A stretch of DNA of 64,000 nucleotides, taken from positions 62,001 through 126,000 of IMG/VR virus record IMGVR_UViG_3300037110_000087. The stretch is one strand, 5' to 3'. The notes below the pieces were generated by a model that was given only the letters and a program-made list of their open reading frames with translations, was not told the DNA's origin and did not search any database. Below, one piece after another: positions 24,007 through 31,074 of the stretch (its first letter is position 1; each line of letters begins with the position of its first letter). The position numbers and the translations under genes are program-made.

Positions 24007-24696
24007 CTAGGTTAAAACTGCCATACCGGAAAATGCTCCACCAAAAGTCAGTGTGACCTGATTCTCAGAGTTATAAGTCACGTCCCCATAGACCTGCGCA
24101 TTCGTGGAGTCTATTACTACAACACTTGGATATCGATTTAAACTATGATCTATCACCCAAATCCTCGATGGCATGCTTTGTGTAAAAGTATACCATGAAG
24201 AATCCCCAGGAATTCCTTGGGGTCCAGCCGGACCCTGTGGACCTTGGTCACCTTGAGGTCCCACTGTTCCCATTGGCCCCTCTGGTCCAACAGGTCCAGA
24301 TGGTCCAGTCTCTCCCTGAGGTCCAGGTGGTCCAGTAATAATAGTCCACCAATCTGGAGTATCTGCAATATTACTTTGCTGATCTGTTATTGGATTAAAT
24401 ATCGGATGTTCATGCTCGTGTTCATGGTGTGATTCAGGAGTGTAAGTTCCTGTAGAACATCCAGTGATAGGAATTATTATTTGGTTTGATGTCGTCGCAG
24501 ATTTCAGGAACCAAGTCCCAGTGCCTCTGACAGGACAATCAGCGGGGACAATTCGGTTAAGGTTATCATCAGTGCCAGTTATTTGACTGTAATAAATATA
24601 GACGTTCCCATCTATCTCTCTGATATCCCGATCGTGACATTTCTTTGAGGGTATTTGACGCAGGTCTTCGACTGTTTTTACAGTGATGTTAGCCAT
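24007..24696 (-). CDS. Collagen-repeat structural protein
   Basis: Gly-X-Y run; C-terminal FTQ...[13 protein letters not shown] domain. Confidence 0.8.
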
Positions 24697-24751: not shown

Positions 24752-24780
24752 TTGACAGAGAAATCTTCTTGTGGTATAAT
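24752..24780 (+). promoter_or_regulatory. Perfect sigma70 promoter TTGACA-N17-TATAAT with extended TG
   Basis: Exact consensus read from the sequence. Confidence 0.9.
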
Positions 24781-24786
24781 GGAAAA

Positions 24787-25308
24787 ATGAGCGAACTGGA
24801 CCTCTCCACTTTACGCGAACTCCCGGCCTGGAAGAGCCTGGAAGAGTCCCGGAAGCTCAAGCTGAATGGCCTCCGCGCCCAGATCCTGGCCAAGGAAGGC
24901 AGTCTCAAGGAACTGGCCAAGGAAATACCCCAGAACCCCATGGGAGGGTGGTTTTCCGGTGCAGCCAACGAATCCCTGGAAGTCGAAATGACCTTCGGAC
25001 GGATCAAGAATGATATCAAGGCCCTGCAAGCTGAAATTGCAAAGACGATCCGAATGGATACCAGGGTCCTGGCTGGTGGAGAGAGTGCCCGATATGGTTC
25101 CCTGATTGTCGCCTTGGACCCCTCAGGACACACTACGGTCTACCGGCTGGTCCTGGTCCGCGAGGAACATCTGGAGCGGGGCATCGAACATGTCGAACTG
25201 GGTTGCCCCTTGGCCGACTCCCTGCTGGGAATCACCGAAGGTGAAGAGTTCGAAATGGGTATCTACTACAAGACTAAGTGCGAGGTCCTAAAGGTAATTA
25301 ATAATTAA
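24787..25308 (+). CDS. GreA/GreB-fold protein lacking the acidic catalytic tip
   Basis: Hand alignment to E. coli GreA: coiled-coil, then YG..IV...YRLV..E......VELGCPLADSLLG..EGE....CEVLKV. Confidence 0.7.
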   Translation: MSELDLSTLRELPAWKSLEESRKLKLNGLRAQILAKEGSLKELAKEIPQNPMGGWFSGAANESLEVEMTFGRIKNDIKALQAEIAKTIRMDTRVLAGGESARYGSLIVALDPSGHTTVYRLVLVREEHLERGIEHVELGCPLADSLLGITEGEEFEMGIYYKTKCEVLKVINN

Positions 25309-25321
25309 TAACTGGGATACC

Positions 25322-25350
25322 TTGTGTGAAATCCACGCCTGTGGTATAAT
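25322..25350 (+). promoter_or_regulatory. sigma70-type promoter TTGtgt-N17-TATAAT with extended TG
   Basis: TGTGGTATAAT identical to the 24770-24780 element; SD follows. Confidence 0.7.
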
Positions 25351-25372
25351 AAAGGGAAGGAGAAATCCATGA

Positions 25373-25762
25373 ATGAGCATAACCACCAAGCAACTTAAGG
25401 ATATCATTGCCGTGAATATCATGGCCTGGGGAGAGAGACTTTCCAGTATGGTGATCGAGGAACCTTCCGCATCCCAAGCAAAGAACTGGGCACGGGTTCA
25501 TAAGTGCAAGGTGGAGTTTCCCACCCCGGAAGAGTTTGAGTCCACCTTCATGGACGCAGAAGAGATCGGGATGATCAGAGAACAGCTTGAAGATGGCCCC
25601 GATGTGGATGGAATTGTCTTCAATGAAAGCTATGTCAAGACGGGCAATAGTTTCATCAGCCGAGTCTTCCAATGCAAGACTTGGGAATATCTCCATTGCC
25701 TATATGTTTTCACGGACGAACTAGATCACAATGTCGTCCTGATAACCATTCATGAGGACTGA
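25373..25762 (+). CDS. Hypothetical protein
   Basis: SD GGAAGGAG; downstream of the promoter. Confidence 0.7.
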   Translation: MSITTKQLKDIIAVNIMAWGERLSSMVIEEPSASQAKNWARVHKCKVEFPTPEEFESTFMDAEEIGMIREQLEDGPDVDGIVFNESYVKTGNSFISRVFQCKTWEYLHCLYVFTDELDHNVVLITIHED

Positions 25763-25767
25763 GTGCT

Positions 25768-26047
25768 ATGTGGGGTGAACCCAGGGACTACGAAGAAACT
25801 CACTTGGCCTCCCCACAGGAGGCCGTGAATGAATGGGCTAGGAATGTTGGGGCAGAGCGACTTGACTGCCAGTGGCTCCTGCACGACTGGGATGTATGGG
25901 TCCGCAACCCCCCACTACACTGGCCCCGAACAGCGTCACCCCGAAGATACTGGGGATTGGACGGTATGGTCTTTTGCAGATGGAACTCCCACCAGCGTTT
26001 ATGATGATGGGAACTGGAAGCGCTATCGGGATCGCAACTGCTATTAG
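25768..26047 (+). pseudogene. Small conserved phage protein split by a +1 frameshift in a C6 run
   Basis: Removing one C at 25908-25913 joins WDVWVRNP to HYTGPEQRHPED, giving one 92-aa ORF. Confidence 0.65.
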
Positions 26048-26074
26048 AATTCGTGAAGAAGCATATCAGAGGGT

Positions 26075-26512
26075 GTGATGAGACAGCTTAGCTTTTACTG
26101 CGGTGACTACCAAGCCGCATTGAAGTATTTTAACGCCAACAATCCAAATTCCCACATGGAGAAGCTCACCCAGGATCTGCAGACCGGCGATCAGATGGTT
26201 GAGGAAACCCGACAATATATAGGATCATTCCTCGACAATACCCTGATTACCTATGGGGCCTTCTGGAACCAGGAAACCAGCCCACTCTATTTGTTCTCCA
26301 ATTGTGAGTTTGTGTTCAACACCCTGCGTCTACTGGTTGCCGAAGGGAAGCTGGATCGAAATCAGGTGAACATCCTCTATTTCGAGGATAAAGATGCCAA
26401 TTCCCCTCACATGGGTCTAATGATCGGGAAGAATGGACAGCTTAACTGCTGGCCCTACGGATTCTTTGATACCATGGGGAAGCTGCTGACACGGCTGATG
26501 GAACTGCGCTAG
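26075..26512 (+). CDS. Stand-alone DUF3696-like domain protein
   Basis: NTLRLLVAEGKL...VNILYF...IGKNGQLNCWPYGFFD...LLTRL. Confidence 0.7.
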   Translation: MMRQLSFYCGDYQAALKYFNANNPNSHMEKLTQDLQTGDQMVEETRQYIGSFLDNTLITYGAFWNQETSPLYLFSNCEFVFNTLRLLVAEGKLDRNQVNILYFEDKDANSPHMGLMIGKNGQLNCWPYGFFDTMGKLLTRLMELR

Positions 26513-28653
26513 CTTCCTATTGGAAATAATTTTACATAAGTCTTTATGTAGCCACTGATATCACTAAGGCCCTCCCACAACCTGTAGGATCCACACTGAA
26601 AATTTACGATCTCTGGATGTTTCTTTAGCCACTGATCCAATTTCGGCCATCTAATCTTATATGTAGCTAGCCAATGGATTCCGGGGATAACAATTTCTGC
26701 AGCGTTATTCTCGTACTTTGAAGGTATTGGTTTAAAATTAAATTGGTTACTAAAGGGATCTAATCGAGATAGCCATAATTTATAACCATCATCTGATGGG
26801 TCAACGTAGTTCAGGAGATGAAGTTTCTCACTTTCTCTGAGTCCGTCATAAGCTTCATTGTAGATTAATCTATATTTTTCCTCTTCATACTGTTGTTTAG
26901 CAAGATCGAATTTAGGAGCGTAACCCAATAAATGTTTCTTCAGATACTCGGTAGAGAATTGGATGGGATCAAACATATCCGCATCATCAAACAATTCAGG
27001 ATAAAATTCATCGGAATCGTTTAAATATCCACTCACAAAATCAAAAACCTTCTTCGTCCCACGAATCAAAGGAACTAATTTATCAAAATCCTTAATCCTG
27101 TTACCCTTGAAATGGTTAATGACACTAAGTATATCACCTATGTGAACCTTCTTCTGAATCAGCAGATCAAGATCCTTTGCTATATAAGATTCATATTCCT
27201 GGCCAGGATAGTCCAAGGGATTCACACTTTGAAGAGTAATCTTTGGTGTCACCCAAGTAGGACCGTTCATTTTTCGCAAGTAAGGAACGCAATTAATCTT
27301 ATTTTGGGCATAATCCATTAATCTTTCGTCACGTACATTTCTACTAGTGGCTACTTCAATCAGGGCGTCTATCATTCCCTTTGCTGCTTTTTGTTTTCTT
27401 ATTTCTAAACATTTATCGAGAACCTCAGGCCAGACATAGCCTGCCTGTTTACAATATTGTCCAATTTTGTCCAATTTTGTATTAGCTCCCCAATCAACAT
27501 AGTCTTTATCAGTTATTGGTATAATGAACCAATTTTGGAACATCTTAGGCTCAATCAACAGTTGTCTCTTCTTGATCTTTCCAGCCTTTAGCATTACCTC
27601 CATCTCTGAAAGAGTCTTGATGGGTATATCTTTCTGGAACTGATCAATATACTGAGCACGAAGATTCGAAGAAGTCTTCTTGATCGCACGTTCAGCTTCG
27701 GGCCAAGCTGCACCAATTACATAAAGGGCATAGCCTGCAGCCCACATACCCTTATTAACAATAGCGGCTTCAACATTAGGATCCCTGGGACCAAAATCTT
27801 CAAACCACCCTCTGATTAGATTTTCCTTATCCATGACCTGAGCATCAAACACCTTTGGTTCAAGTTCTGGATAGCGTCTAATCATAATACGCTCTAGTAC
27901 GCTAGCGATCATGACTACTGACTTAGTACCTAGAATCTTTAGATATTTGTCCGAAGGTTCGACGTAGGGAAGAATCCTCTCACAATAATCAACCATCTCA
28001 GGATCTTTCGTCTTATCCCTTATTTCATGAACTAAGTCATAGACCTGATTATTTTTGAGATGATAACCATCTCTGAAGCTCCGATCCCCACGATCACAGA
28101 ACTGACCTGAATCTGGATGTAACTGGGCGTAGGGTTTCCCATCTCGGTAAAAAATCCATAGGGGTCCATCCTTGAGATAGCTGGCAGCAGTCTTCGTACT
28201 GGCCGCCGTACACCAATTGGTATTTGATCCCAAAACTACCGCAGCCTGAGGGGTTGTTACCCGATAAACAATCCAGGGGTCTTCTTTATATTTAATCTCC
28301 GACCCATTAATGCCTTCGTGAACATTTCGCTTCTCTTGCTTCTTTGAATCACCAAATTCATCCAGAGCTTTAAACAGAGAATTGGGAGTATAGGAACCAA
28401 TGTCTGTACTATGGGATTCTTTAAACTGTGAGTTCTTCAGGCGAGTGAATTTCTCGAGTAGACCACGAATCTTTTCGACATCCTCTGGTATTTTGATATT
28501 TTTTGCTTTAATTTGTTTGACCAGCCAGTCGGTATAATTAGAAGGGGGATCAATCTCATCAGCTTGATCCAAGACCTCTGGACCCACTGAATACTTTCGC
28601 ATCAACAGCTCTTTCTTTCTCTCATTGATAACTGCACTAAACCGGAAGGTCAT
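26509..28653 (-). CDS. Large leader-bearing protein with PcfJ-like TNWCTA domain and WPE-type helical repeats
   Basis: MTFRFSA start; VYRVTTPQAAVVLGSNTNWCTAA; AWPEAERAI and VWPEVL repeats. Confidence 0.65.
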   Translation of the reverse strand: MTFRFSAVINERKKELLMRKYSVGPEVLDQADEIDPPSNYTDWLVKQIKAKNIKIPEDVEKIRGLLEKFTRLKNSQFKESHSTDIGSYTPNSLFKALDEFGDSKKQEKRNVHEGINGSEIKYKEDPWIVYRVTTPQAAVVLGSNTNWCTAASTKTAASYLKDGPLWIFYRDGKPYAQLHPDSGQFCDRGDRSFRDGYHLKNNQVYDLVHEIRDKTKDPEMVDYCERILPYVEPSDKYLKILGTKSVVMIASVLERIMIRRYPELEPKVFDAQVMDKENLIRGWFEDFGPRDPNVEAAIVNKGMWAAGYALYVIGAAWPEAERAIKKTSSNLRAQYIDQFQKDIPIKTLSEMEVMLKAGKIKKRQLLIEPKMFQNWFIIPITDKDYVDWGANTKLDKIGQYCKQAGYVWPEVLDKCLEIRKQKAAKGMIDALIEVATSRNVRDERLMDYAQNKINCVPYLRKMNGPTWVTPKITLQSVNPLDYPGQEYESYIAKDLDLLIQKKVHIGDILSVINHFKGNRIKDFDKLVPLIRGTKKVFDFVSGYLNDSDEFYPELFDDADMFDPIQFSTEYLKKHLLGYAPKFDLAKQQYEEEKYRLIYNEAYDGLRESEKLHLLNYVDPSDDGYKLWLSRLDPFSNQFNFKPIPSKYENNAAEIVIPGIHWLATYKIRWPKLDQWLKKHPEIVNFQCGSYRLWEGLSDISGYIKTYVKLFPIGS

Positions 28654-29688: not shown

Positions 29689-31074
29689 TCAGTCCTTTGG
29701 ATCTAGTGTAACATTCAAGACCCATTTCTTTTTGCCAGAATCCCAGATTCGATACCAGCCCTTCTTGGCTGCTTCTTCCTGCTCATTTACACCCGCTGGA
29801 ACTCTGAAGTTGAACTTATGCTTGCGTACCTGTTGTCTCGTGTAGTAATAATCAGGCCCCAGTTCTTTTACACATTCAAAGCCCAGATCTTGATAAAGTT
29901 TCCCAGTATGCAAACGATTATCTGAGAAACTTATTATCTTCTGATATTGATTGAGTTGGAAAATCAAATTAAGTGCTTTCTGATGTGGATTCCAGGTTTT
30001 ATACTGATGGTCGAAACTCGCTCTGGTCCATTCTAGTTCGGCCCCAGGCCGTTTCTTGAAAACCCAAGCTCCGACAACCTTGGATTTATACTTCGCGCAA
30101 ATGTAATGGGTCCCACTACACTGATTATCGCCAAGATAATGGAATTTGCTTAGAAATTCCTTCACATCATTCATATGACAAAATTCATAGGTTGGCTTGA
30201 TACGCTTTTGTGATTTGGGAATTAGTTGATCGATGATAAGCTGCCAATTCTCATCTCCAAAGATCTGGAGCAAACGAATTCCGAACGATTCACATAAGAG
30301 ATGTTTATCATGATCTCTTTTGGGTTCATTCGCTACAGCTTCCGAGTGCCATCTTAATCCTTGATATTCTATCCCAGTTCTAATAGAAGGAATCCAGATG
30401 TCAAGCTCATATGGCTTTATTATGGTTTTGTCTGAAAATAAAGCGTCAGGGAAAGATTTAACAATCAATTCGAAGATCTTGTGAGCGGGGCTTGTATCCG
30501 CCGTCCCTGCAACAACACAACCACAGCTAAGAGTGAACTCCCTCAGCACATCTTTACCAACAATCTCTTTAGAATTCCCACAATCACACAAAAACCGGAA
30601 TTTCTCACCTGTTTTGAGACTGAACTCTCCTTCTGGCAATCGGTCGGGATCGAGTCGTAGCTTACCCCATTTTTCATTCAATATTAAGCGATCAGTAAAG
30701 TTACATCTCCCACAACGATGAACATTACCTCTAACTGCTGTCCGGAATGCTTTTATGGAAGTCCTACCACAATCACAGATGAACTGCACTTTCATAGCAG
30801 ATCCCTGACTCCACTCATCCAGAAGAGGTTGATCTGGATCTAATCTCAGCTCGCCCCATTTTTGTTCGAGCCAATAGCTCTTCGGTTTGTCCTCGCAATG
30901 ACCACAAGATTTTAGTTTTATAACTGCGTAGAACTGTTTGGTCGTTGTTCTACCACAGCTACAAATGAATACAAATTCAGAATGAGATCCTGGACCCCAA
31001 TCGTTGGGAAGGAGCTGATTCGGGTCAAGATGCAGGGTACCAAACTTTGTATTAAGCCATTCTTCGCGCTTCAT
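29689..31074 (-). CDS. Hef-like/very-short-patch PD-(D/E)xK homing endonuclease with three Zn-ribbon repeats and a C-terminal GNAT-like domain
   Basis: 3x K[FW]G.L.LDP...F.C.CG; YELDIWIP...GIEYQGLRWH; SFSDNRL..G.LY..LGF...YRIWDSG. Confidence 0.7.
   Translation of the reverse strand: MKREEWLNTKFGTLHLDPNQLLPNDWGPGSHSEFVFICSCGRTTTKQFYAVIKLKSCGHCEDKPKSYWLEQKWGELRLDPDQPLLDEWSQGSAMKVQFICDCGRTSIKAFRTAVRGNVHRCGRCNFTDRLILNEKWGKLRLDPDRLPEGEFSLKTGEKFRFLCDCGNSKEIVGKDVLREFTLSCGCVVAGTADTSPAHKIFELIVKSFPDALFSDKTIIKPYELDIWIPSIRTGIEYQGLRWHSEAVANEPKRDHDKHLLCESFGIRLLQIFGDENWQLIIDQLIPKSQKRIKPTYEFCHMNDVKEFLSKFHYLGDNQCSGTHYICAKYKSKVVGAWVFKKRPGAELEWTRASFDHQYKTWNPHQKALNLIFQLNQYQKIISFSDNRLHTGKLYQDLGFECVKELGPDYYYTRQQVRKHKFNFRVPAGVNEQEEAAKKGWYRIWDSGKKKWVLNVTLDPKD

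What the first reader, a model, noticed from the sequence alone, without database searches (positions are those of the whole stretch)
24787..25308. Phage-encoded GreA-fold protein with the catalytic acidic tip replaced: candidate RNA polymerase secondary-channel modulator
The C-terminal half aligns by eye with the GreA/GreB C-domain, and the N-terminal half is a coiled-coil hairpin. Where GreA has GDLxENAEY (the Asp/Glu pair that positions Mg2+ for transcript cleavage) this protein has GGWFSGAANES. Established: non-cleaving Gre homologues such as Gfh1 and Rnk bind RNAP without stimulating cleavage. Inference: an early host-takeover factor that occupies the secondary channel or competes with Gre/DksA.
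Basis: partly seen in the sequence, partly recalled or inferred. Interest (0 to 1): 0.75.

Follow-up and report, generated by a model that had tools for sequence, protein, structure and literature searches.

The report
Phage Gre-like factor, remodelled tip
A 307-kb peat phage carries a real but very divergent relative of the bacterial transcript-cleavage factor GreA that has lost one of the two catalytic acidic tip residues and rebuilt the tip, so it probably docks on the host RNA polymerase without working as a normal cleavage factor; this is untested.

Summary
The ORF at 24787-25308 (+), 173 aa, is a real gene and a true Gre-family homologue. A profile of its family matches canonical GreA over both domains (98.8 %, E 5.6e-17). 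An alignment-based AlphaFold model (pLDDT 82) finds Gfh1, GreA, GreB and Rnk as its top 14 PDB hits.

The ungapped alignment puts G58-A59-A60-N61-E62 opposite GreA G40-D41-L42-S43-E44. Asp41 is lost (Ala or Gly in all 10 members), but Glu44 is kept as an invariant Glu. The end of helix 1 before it is replaced by a conserved Pro/Gly/Trp-Phe segment.

The family is tiny: about 10 clusters among 5.8 billion proteins, and none in GenBank phages. It occurs in three lineages of related jumbo phages and as low-GC single-gene islands in a few bacteria, one of them a Holophaga MAG that also has normal GreA.

The phage has no detectable RNA polymerase or sigma factor. The gene sits 6 nt behind a perfect sigma-70 promoter, one of 14 that mostly precede GC3-rich ORFs, among them DNA ligase and helicase genes.

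Best reading: a cleavage-impaired secondary-channel factor acting on host RNAP. Binding and activity are untested. I rate it a new variant of a known kind, of moderate interest.

The parts
24752..24780 (+). Sigma-70-type promoter. TTGACA, 17-nt spacer, TATAAT, with TG extended -10 (TGTGGTATAAT): 12 of 12 consensus positions.
   Evidence: 12/12, TG present; 2 perfect sites in the window against 0.01 expected; one of 14 such sites in the genome against 0.9 expected.
24781..24786 (+). Only 6 nt (GGAAAA) lie between the -10 hexamer and the ATG, with no Shine-Dalgarno. The mRNA is probably leaderless or nearly so (inferred).
   Evidence: Sequence. Searches show that most other promoters of this class have 20-35-nt leaders, typically with an AGGAGAAATCC-like Shine-Dalgarno. 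The start is fixed by alignment with homologues.
24787..25308 (+). Gre-like gene, 173 codons plus stop (protein P0001).
24787..24837 (+). Family-specific N-terminal extension, residues 1-17, with invariant L9, L12, P13, W15, K16. Canonical GreA has no counterpart.
   Evidence: invariant columns. The hhalign alignments start at residues 26-29.
24838..24924 (+). Coiled-coil helix 1, residues 18-46, ending at invariant E46.
   Evidence: AF2 model..
24925..24963 (+). Remodelled tip segment, residues 47-59 (I P Q N P M G G W F S G A). It is predicted non-helical with low pLDDT, and P48 and G54 are invariant. It occupies the place of the distal turns of GreA helix 1. A59 is the Asp41 position.
24970..24972 (+). 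Codon GAA for E62, the invariant Glu aligned with GreA Glu44. It lies within the invariant N61-E62-S63.
24964..25050 (+). Coiled-coil helix 2, residues 60-88.
   Evidence: Ungapped alignment to GreA helix 2.
25075..25302 (+). Gre C-terminal globular domain, residues 97-172. It keeps the signature [SC]-P-[LV]-x-x-x-L-L-G ... G.
   Evidence: PF01272 at residues 102-170. Residues 97-172 superpose on Gfh1 79-156, Z 10.5, rmsd 2.6. Invariants P141, L146, L147, G148, G152.
24787..26512 (+). GC-rich plus-strand island of about four small ORFs between minus-strand genes. GC3 is 0.59-0.67 against 0.32-0.40 in the flanks. The Gre-like gene is its first gene.
25322..25350 (+). Second promoter of the same class (TTGTGT, 17 nt, TGGTATAAT), 14 nt after the Gre-like stop. 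It serves the next ORF at 25373-25762.

Best explanation
P0001 is a member of a small, fast-evolving, horizontally mobile clade of the GreA/GreB/Gfh1 superfamily carried by a group of peat jumbo phages.

Shown:
- It has the two-domain Gre architecture.
- Its coiled coil has the same length as that of GreA and Gfh1.
- It keeps the Gre C-domain signature.
- It keeps the Glu44-equivalent glutamate.
- It has lost the Asp41 equivalent.
- It has a conserved Pro/Gly/aromatic segment where GreA has the last turns of helix 1.

Inferred mechanism:
- The C-domain docks on the beta-prime rim helices of the host RNA polymerase.
- The coiled coil enters the secondary channel.
- Without the Asp, and with a bulkier irregular tip, the protein cannot position the second Mg2+ as GreA does.
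- It would then act as a non-cleaving or poorly cleaving occupant. It would exclude the host's GreA (and DksA-type factors if present) and/or alter catalysis, as Gfh1, Rv3788 and Rnk do.

The phage appears to depend on host RNAP. The gene is driven by a consensus sigma-70 promoter of the class that also drives ligase and helicase genes. It is therefore probably made early, by unmodified host holoenzyme, from a probably leaderless mRNA.
For: Homology and fold:
- hhalign of the family against canonical GreA: 98.8 %, E 5.6e-17, 140 columns across both domains; one search agrees.
- Among 401 Acidobacteriota genomes the family profile finds canonical GreA at about 50 bits over positions 20-170.
- AF2 model: pLDDT 81.9, pTM 0.68.
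- Foldseek's top 14 hits are all Gfh1, GreA, GreB or Rnk.
- VIA-align gives Z 10.6 to RNAP-bound Gfh1 over 146 of 154 residues.
- ESM Atlas neighbours are all GreA_GreB clusters.

Tip:
- A59 aligns with D41 and invariant E62 with E44.
- D41 and E44 contact the catalytic Mg2+, and a D41A E44Y variant lacks antipause activity (PMC7527559).

C-domain: invariant P141, L146, L147, G148 and G152 match the canonical invariants P121, L126, G128 and G132. The Gre globular domain binds the beta-prime rim helices (PMC7527559).

Precedent: Gfh1 and Rv3788 inhibit catalysis. Rnk binds RNAP. All three displace Gre and DksA in vitro (PMC4598747).

Dependence on host RNAP:
- No Sigma70_r2, Rpb2_6, T7-type RNAP or DksA/TraR match in G000.
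- No DFDGD motif in any of the six frames.

Promoter. The class also drives an NAD-dependent DNA ligase and an SF2 helicase.

Selection: the gene is retained in three phage lineages that share other genes with G000. The family forms one clade with 100/100 support.
Against: - There is no direct evidence of RNAP binding.
- P0001 is below the Pfam gathering score (22.5 against 26.9). It is far below the NCBIfam GreA cut-offs (18 against 139-167 bits).
- The invariant E62, E46 and E65 could still supply an acidic pair, so cleavage activity is not excluded.
- The tip has low model confidence (pLDDT about 50). Its shape and reach are unknown.
- The host is unknown. The early timing rests on promoter class alone.
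- No RNA run covering the gene was listed.
- The presence of the gene in bacterial chromosomes shows it is tolerated by cells. This argues against a strongly toxic shut-off factor.
Confidence: 0.5

Rival explanations
1. It is a working transcript-cleavage and anti-arrest factor. The phage brings its own GreA-like activity to keep host RNAP moving on a 307-kb genome and to clear backtracked complexes ahead of replication forks. It would use E62 together with another conserved acidic residue (E46 or E65) in place of Asp41.
For: - E62 (the Glu44 position), N61 and S63 are invariant. E46 is invariant. E65 is Glu or Asp in most members, Thr in one (P0005).
- The coiled coil has full Gre length.
- The gene shares a promoter class with replication and repair genes, ligase and helicase.
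- Gre factors are known to resolve backtracked complexes (PMC4598747, PMC7527559).
Against: - The Asp41 position is Ala or Gly in all ten members.
- Both D41 and E44 are described as taking part in an essential Mg2+ contact.
- The Holophaga MAG that carries a family member already has a canonical GreA. The bacterial copy would therefore be redundant if the activities were the same.
- A long branch separates the family from GreA.
Confidence: 0.22
2. The Gre fold has been re-used for something other than RNAP. It might bind another partner through the new tip and the N-terminal LPxWK extension, for example a host defence or stress protein, or it might act as a chaperone.
For: - There are family-specific invariant motifs with no counterpart in GreA: L9, L12, P13, W15, K16 and the P-x-N...G-W-F segment.
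- Divergence is extreme (NCBIfam 18 bits).
- Single-gene mobility between phages and bacteria is typical of accessory or conflict genes.
Against: The parts of Gre factors that matter for RNAP are the ones that are kept:
- the C-domain signature,
- the coiled-coil length,
- the Glu44 position.
All characterised proteins of this fold bind RNAP.
Confidence: 0.2
3. It is a decaying, functionless copy of a captured host greA.
For: It scores below the family thresholds, and its GC content differs from the phage average.
Against: - It has an intact ORF in about 10 clusters, with 30 invariant columns.
- Homologues occur in three related phage lineages.
- It has its own perfect promoter.
- The family forms a coherent clade rather than scattered GreA derivatives.
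Confidence: 0.03

Closest known systems
GreA / GreB transcript-cleavage factors (Pfam PF03449 + PF01272)
   Same: - Same two-domain architecture and the same coiled-coil length.
- Homologous over both domains.
- The C-domain S/C-P-x-x-x-x-L-L-G signature is kept.
- The Glu44 equivalent is kept.
   Different: - The Asp41 equivalent is Ala or Gly.
- N45 is Ser, and Y48 is aliphatic in most members (Glu in P0005).
- The distal turns of helix 1 are replaced by a Pro/Gly/Trp-Phe segment.
- There is a 17-residue N-terminal extension.
- PF03449 is not detected. The GreA equivalog models score 17-18 bits against cut-offs of 139-167.
- It is borne by phages.
Gfh1 (Thermus/Deinococcus) and Rv3788 (Mycobacterium): Gre homologues that inhibit RNAP
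   Same: - Best structural matches: RNAP-bound Gfh1 3aoi/3aoh, Z 10.5-10.6.
- They are paralogues that coexist with a canonical GreA and do not cleave.
- The Holophaga MAG likewise has GreA plus a family member.
   Different: - Gfh1 and Rv3788 keep both tip acidic residues, and Rv3788 needs them for inhibition. This family keeps one.
- There is no specific sequence relationship. Identity in the structural alignments is 13-24 %.
- pH-switching has not been assessed.
Rnk (E. coli; PDB 3bmb, and 2pn0 from Nitrosomonas)
   Same: Gre-type C-domain. It binds RNAP without a known catalytic effect and competes with Gre and DksA. It appears among the Foldseek hits.
   Different: [quoted passage not shown] Here both helices are about 29 residues and the model aligns to full-length Gfh1 and GreA.
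Phage and plasmid TraR/DksA-type secondary-channel effectors (F TraR, lambda Orf73)
   Same: They are the precedent for mobile-element proteins that reprogram host RNAP through the secondary channel (PMC9239242).
   Different: They belong to a different family, with a DksA zinc-finger fold. No PF01258 match exists in this genome. No Gre-family phage effector turned up in my literature or GenBank-phage searches.

Membership tests
Gre superfamily (GreA/GreB/Gfh1/Rnk fold) | C-terminal GreA_GreB globular domain (PF01272) | tested here: met
   - PF01272 E 1.1e-4 for P0001 alone, below the gathering score.
- One relative carries a precomputed PF01272 hit.
- Profile-profile probability 98.8 %.
- Residues 97-172 superpose on the Gfh1 C-domain, Z 10.5, rmsd 2.6.
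Gre superfamily (GreA/GreB/Gfh1/Rnk fold) | N-terminal antiparallel coiled-coil hairpin | tested here: met
   AF2 helices 18-46 and 60-88. The whole model aligns to Gfh1 6-156, GreB and GreA. hhalign covers residues 26-90 against GreA 9-70.
GreA/GreB proper (cleavage factors) | Asp41 at the coiled-coil tip | tested here: not met
   A59 aligns with D41. The column is Ala or Gly in all 10 members.
GreA/GreB proper (cleavage factors) | Glu44 at the coiled-coil tip | tested here: met
   E62 aligns with E44 and is invariant.
GreA/GreB proper (cleavage factors) | Score above the curated family thresholds (NCBIfam greA/greB equivalogs; Pfam PF03449 N-domain) | tested here: not met
   TIGR01462 gives 18.5 bits against a cut-off of 139. 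NF001261 gives 17.4 against 167. PF03449 is not reported even at E <= 10.
GreA/GreB proper (cleavage factors) | Stimulates endonucleolytic cleavage of backtracked RNA by RNAP | not testable with these tools
   This needs an in vitro cleavage assay.
Secondary-channel binding factors (functional class) | Binds RNAP at the beta-prime rim helices and inserts into the secondary channel | not testable with these tools
   Only indirect evidence: the C-domain signature is conserved.
Rnk | Short coiled coil, about half the Gre length | tested here: not met
   The helices are 29 residues each. The alignment to Gfh1 and GreA is full length.
Gfh1 / Rv3788 | [quoted passage not shown] | tested here: not met
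   Only the second acidic position is kept.
DksA/TraR | DksA C4 zinc finger (PF01258) | tested here: not met
   No PF01258 match in P0001 or anywhere in G000.

The most novel reading that the evidence does not exclude
This would be the first Gre-family secondary-channel effector of phage origin. A clade native to about 55 %-GC jumbo phages has turned the GreA cleavage finger into a non-catalytic plug with a Trp-Phe/Gly tip. The phage would use it early in infection to exclude host GreA and DksA-type factors, or to retune host RNAP catalysis. The gene has since been passed as a single-gene cassette into bacterial chromosomes.
Probability: 0.35. Interest if true: 0.7.

Novelty: new variant of a known kind. 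Interest (0 to 1): 0.55.

Why it matters
The secondary channel is a main regulatory entry to the RNAP active site. The mobile-element effectors known to use it are TraR/DksA-like, such as lambda Orf73. A phage-borne Gre-family protein with a naturally redesigned tip would add a second family to that list. The redesign is loss of Asp41, retention of Glu44, and an aromatic/Gly segment instead of helix.

It would also give a natural separation-of-function variant for studying how the tip geometry of Gre factors controls catalysis. It may further show how jumbo phages without their own RNAP tune the host enzyme.

The compositional evidence makes it a clean small case of phage-bacterium gene traffic. 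The gene is 54-58 % GC whether it sits in 45 %, 55 %, 62 % or 70 % GC DNA.

Tried and rejected
- **Complex prediction** of P0001 (with alignment A2) against a 440-aa Holophaga beta-prime fragment (active-site loop, rim helices, F-loop, bridge helix; P0014). Verdict 'no answer': score 0.31 against a mark of 0.32. It is not used as evidence for or against binding.
- **Single-sequence AF2.** It gave the coiled coil but an unfolded C-domain, pLDDT 51.7. The alignment-based model replaced it.
- **phmmer of P0001 alone against PDB.** Only chance hits with E about 0.7. The family profile was needed.
- **PHROGs.** No meaningful hit.
- **megablast of 10 kb around the gene, and tblastn of P0001, against 50,697 GenBank phage records.** No match.
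- **IMG/VR pattern scan with the family alignment.** No further viral contig.
- **Conserved partner gene.** The 714-aa neighbour at 26509-28653 is unrelated to the roughly 740-aa protein that flanks the homologue in contigs L002, L004 and L005. That protein's G000 homologue lies about 190 kb away. There is no conserved gene pair.
- **Expression evidence.** No RNA run was listed for the gene. Laying four runs gave only sparse contigs at 99 % identity or more and no transcript ends. The one RNA-library run covers only 26555-26829.
- **Phage-encoded RNAP as an alternative target.** None was found.
- **Regular cellular paralogue in Acidobacteriota.** Rejected: only 1 of 401 genomes has a true member.
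- **My first promoter regex** used the wrong spacer and found nothing. It was corrected.

Full report
**What is there**

The window is bases 62001-126000 of a 307,124-bp IMG/VR virus record that CheckV rates 98 % complete. Its GC content is 45 %. The region around the finding carries tail-fibre and collagen-like genes on the minus strand.

At 24787-25308 (+) there is a 173-codon ORF, P0001. Its start is fixed by homologues whose N-termini align with M1. The overlapping minus-strand ORFs have no support.

**Is it a Gre protein?**

Alone, P0001 matches only the Pfam GreA_GreB C-domain, and weakly: residues 102-170, E 1.1e-4, 22.5 bits against a gathering score of 26.9.

Exhaustive searches find a very small family:
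- 5 representatives among 1.84 billion clusters;
- 10 proteins among 5.8 billion;
- 33-60 % identity to P0001 (alignment A2).

The family profile links it firmly to GreA:
- It hits E. coli GreA 1grj at E 3.2e-4.
- It matches a canonical GreA (P0012) at E 5e-8 in the whole database.
- hhalign gives 97.7 %, E 1.5e-12, against P0012.
- hhalign gives 98.8 %, E 5.6e-17, over 140 columns against an alignment of ten canonical GreAs, A3.
- In 401 genomes of the Holophaga MAG's phylum it picks out the canonical GreA at about 40-56 bits over profile positions 20-170, that is, over both domains.

The structure prediction agrees:
- An AF2 model built on A2 has mean pLDDT 81.9 and pTM 0.68. It shows helices 18-46 and 60-88, a low-confidence loop at 47-59, and a beta-rich C-domain.
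- Foldseek's 14 significant PDB hits are all Gfh1, GreA, GreB, a GreA/Gfh1 chimera, or Rnk-type proteins.
- VIA-align gives Z 10.6 to RNAP-bound Gfh1 over 146 of 154 residues (model 17-172 against chain 6-156).
- The C-domain alone gives Z 10.5 at rmsd 2.6.
- ESM Atlas neighbours are all GreA_GreB clusters.

The fold claim is confirmed.

**The tip**

The profile alignment is ungapped from E46 to beyond E67. It pairs G58-A59-A60-N61-E62-S63-L64-E65-V66 with G-D-L-S-E-N-A-E-Y. ties the Holophaga GreA numbering to E. coli: D38 is D41 and E41 is E44.

| GreA position | In this family |
|---|---|
| D41 | Ala in P0001, Ala or Gly in all ten members |
| E44 | E62, invariant, flanked by invariant N61 and S63 |

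Residues 49-57 (Q N P M G G W F S) align with helical residues of GreA helix 1. They are rich in Pro and Gly and carry a conserved Trp-Phe (Met-Val in one subclade). P48 and G54 are invariant, and AF2 does not make the segment helical.

The family also has a 17-residue N-terminal extension with invariant L9, L12, P13, W15 and K16. The C-domain keeps the canonical signature positions: P141, L146, G148 and G152 correspond to P121, L126, G128 and G132.

According to PMC7527559, D41 and E44 make an essential contact with the catalytic Mg2+, a D41A E44Y variant lacks antipause activity, and the globular domain binds the beta-prime rim helices.

**Who carries it**

Relatives of the phage:
- Contigs L002/L003 and L004-L007 are 53-57 % GC and consist of many small unannotated ORFs, with SmpB, NAD kinase, RNase III and AAA genes.
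- They share several other proteins with G000, including a roughly 740-aa protein at 39-40 % identity.
- They are therefore distant relatives of this phage, and the Gre-like gene is present in at least three lineages of the group.
- Its position is not conserved.

Bacterial copies:
- The closest copies (56-61 %) lie in cell-like contexts.
- L008-L010 carry an M23 peptidase, an amidohydrolase, a HAD hydrolase and a PIN/Phd pair, at 61-64 % GC.
- A Holophaga sp. MAG from SPRUCE peat, L011, has the gene between a class-V aminotransferase and a DUF927 gene. MraW, RuvC and an RNB-domain exoribonuclease (RNase II/R type) are nearby.
- That MAG also has a canonical GreA at 65 bits.
- Only this 1 of 401 genomes has a true family member, at 261 bits.

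Composition: the gene is 54-58 % GC everywhere. The host DNA is 45 % (G000), 53-57 % (phage relatives), 61-64 % (L008-L010) and 70 % (Holophaga, where the 500-bp window at the gene dips to 58 %).

A tree puts the family in one clade (100/100) on a long branch from GreA. It has three subclades. The bacterial copies nest with the G000 copy, and the other two subclades include the copies that lie on phage-like contigs (midpoint root only).

I read this as a gene native to the roughly 55 %-GC phages that has moved as a single-gene cassette. The direction is inferred, not proven.

No relative exists in 50,697 GenBank phage records. Canonical-GreA-like ORFs occur in 23 of those records, several of which are plainly bacterial contigs. 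I did not follow these up.

**Expression signals and target**

- A 12-of-12 sigma-70 promoter with TG extension lies at 24752-24780. Two perfect sites occur in the window against 0.01 expected.
- The ATG follows the -10 hexamer after 6 nt with no Shine-Dalgarno, so the mRNA is probably leaderless (inference).
- A relaxed pattern (TTG[AT][CGT][AGT], 13-15 nt, TGnTAnAAT) finds 14 sites in the genome against 0.93 in shuffles.
- 11 of the 14 precede GC3-rich ORFs (0.59-0.85). Seven of them have an AGGAG(A/C)A-type Shine-Dalgarno, in three cases exactly AGGAGAAATCC.
- The GC-rich islands seen in the genome profile coincide with these sites.
- Genes of this class include an NAD-dependent DNA ligase and an SF2 helicase. 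The class looks early or replicative rather than structural.
- The genome shows no Sigma70_r2, Rpb2_6, T7-type RNAP or DksA/TraR match. It has no DFDGD motif in any frame.

The phage therefore most likely relies on host RNAP, which is the natural target of a Gre-like protein.

The host is unknown. The peat habitat and the Holophaga copy are leads only.

**Interpretation**

Best-supported reading (0.5): a secondary-channel factor that docks like Gre or Gfh1 but cannot promote cleavage normally, because Asp41 is missing and the tip is remodelled. It would act as a competitor or modulator of host RNAP.

This fits the known behaviour of Gfh1, Rv3788 and Rnk, which bind RNAP, do not cleave, and displace Gre and DksA (PMC4598747). 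It differs from them: Gfh1 and Rv3788 keep both acidic residues, and Rnk has a short coiled coil.

Rivals:
- Retained cleavage or anti-arrest activity using E62 plus E46 or E65 (0.22).
- A role independent of RNAP (0.2).
- Gene decay (0.03).

None of the functional steps is shown. Binding, channel insertion, lack of cleavage and early timing are all inferences.

**Novelty and score**

Literature searches found phage TraR-type effectors (PMC9239242) but no phage Gre-family effector. The protein fails the curated GreA and GreB thresholds and one defining catalytic residue, so I do not file it as GreA or GreB.

It is a new, phage-associated variant within the Gre superfamily. It is interesting as a candidate and as a natural tip redesign, but it is built on a known fold with known non-cleaving precedents. 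Interest 0.55.

Noticed in passing
G000 genome-wide; in the window at 24752-24780 and 25322-25350: There is a distinct promoter class. Its -35 region often reads CTTGTG(C/T)GAAATC or TTGACA, and it has an extended -10 TG(G/T)TATAAT. Several members are followed by an AGGAG(A/C)A-type Shine-Dalgarno, often AGGAGAAATCC. There are 14 sites against 0.9 expected. Most lie in front of GC3-rich ORFs (0.59-0.85) that form GC-rich islands in a 45 % GC genome.
   Followed up: partly
G000:C1:259039-259353 (minus strand, outside the window): A second gene of the same promoter class also has only 6 nt between the -10 hexamer and the ATG (105 aa, GC3 0.67). Leaderless starts may therefore recur in this phage.
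   Followed up: no
window 26075-26512 (+): A 145-aa ORF in the same GC-rich island matches DUF3696 (PF12476, E 3.3e-10, above the cut-off) in residues 94-141 only. It looks like a stand-alone fragment of a domain that, to my knowledge, normally sits at the C-terminus of larger ATPase-type proteins. Its function is unknown.
   Followed up: no
window 24007-24696 (-): A collagen-repeat tail-fibre-like protein (PF01391) has a His/Glu run (H-H-E-H-E-H-E-H) ahead of the Gly-X-Y repeats. Its start lies back to back with the Gre-like gene's promoter region.
   Followed up: no
window 25374, run X3: One 233-nt contig from another peat metagenome matches 25374-25460 exactly. Upstream it continues into 146 nt unlike the window. 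A related strain may therefore differ just upstream of the ORF that follows the Gre-like gene. This is a single low-depth contig.
   Followed up: no
L002:2386-4629, L004:6606-8720, L005:1803-4007; G000:C1:277708-279945: A roughly 740-aa protein without a Pfam match lies next to the Gre-like gene in the related phage contigs. The two contig copies compared (L002, L004) are 75 % identical to each other. Its 39-40 % identical homologue in G000 lies about 190 kb away from the Gre-like gene.
   Followed up: partly
L011:8001-8519 (Holophaga sp. MAG, JBELAL010000006.1): The bacterial copy starts with GTG. It fills a 58 %-GC gap between a class-V aminotransferase gene and a convergent DUF927 gene in DNA that is otherwise 70 % GC. 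It looks like a single-gene insertion rather than a prophage.
   Followed up: partly
window 29689-31074 (-): A 461-aa ORF matches HNH and homing-endonuclease PHROGs (phrog_559, E 2.3e-43) and has a weak CDGSH zinc-finger hit.
   Followed up: no
L002 (31-kb contig of a related phage): The relative encodes SmpB, a Band_7 protein, an NAD kinase and a NADAR-domain protein close to its Gre-like gene.
   Followed up: no
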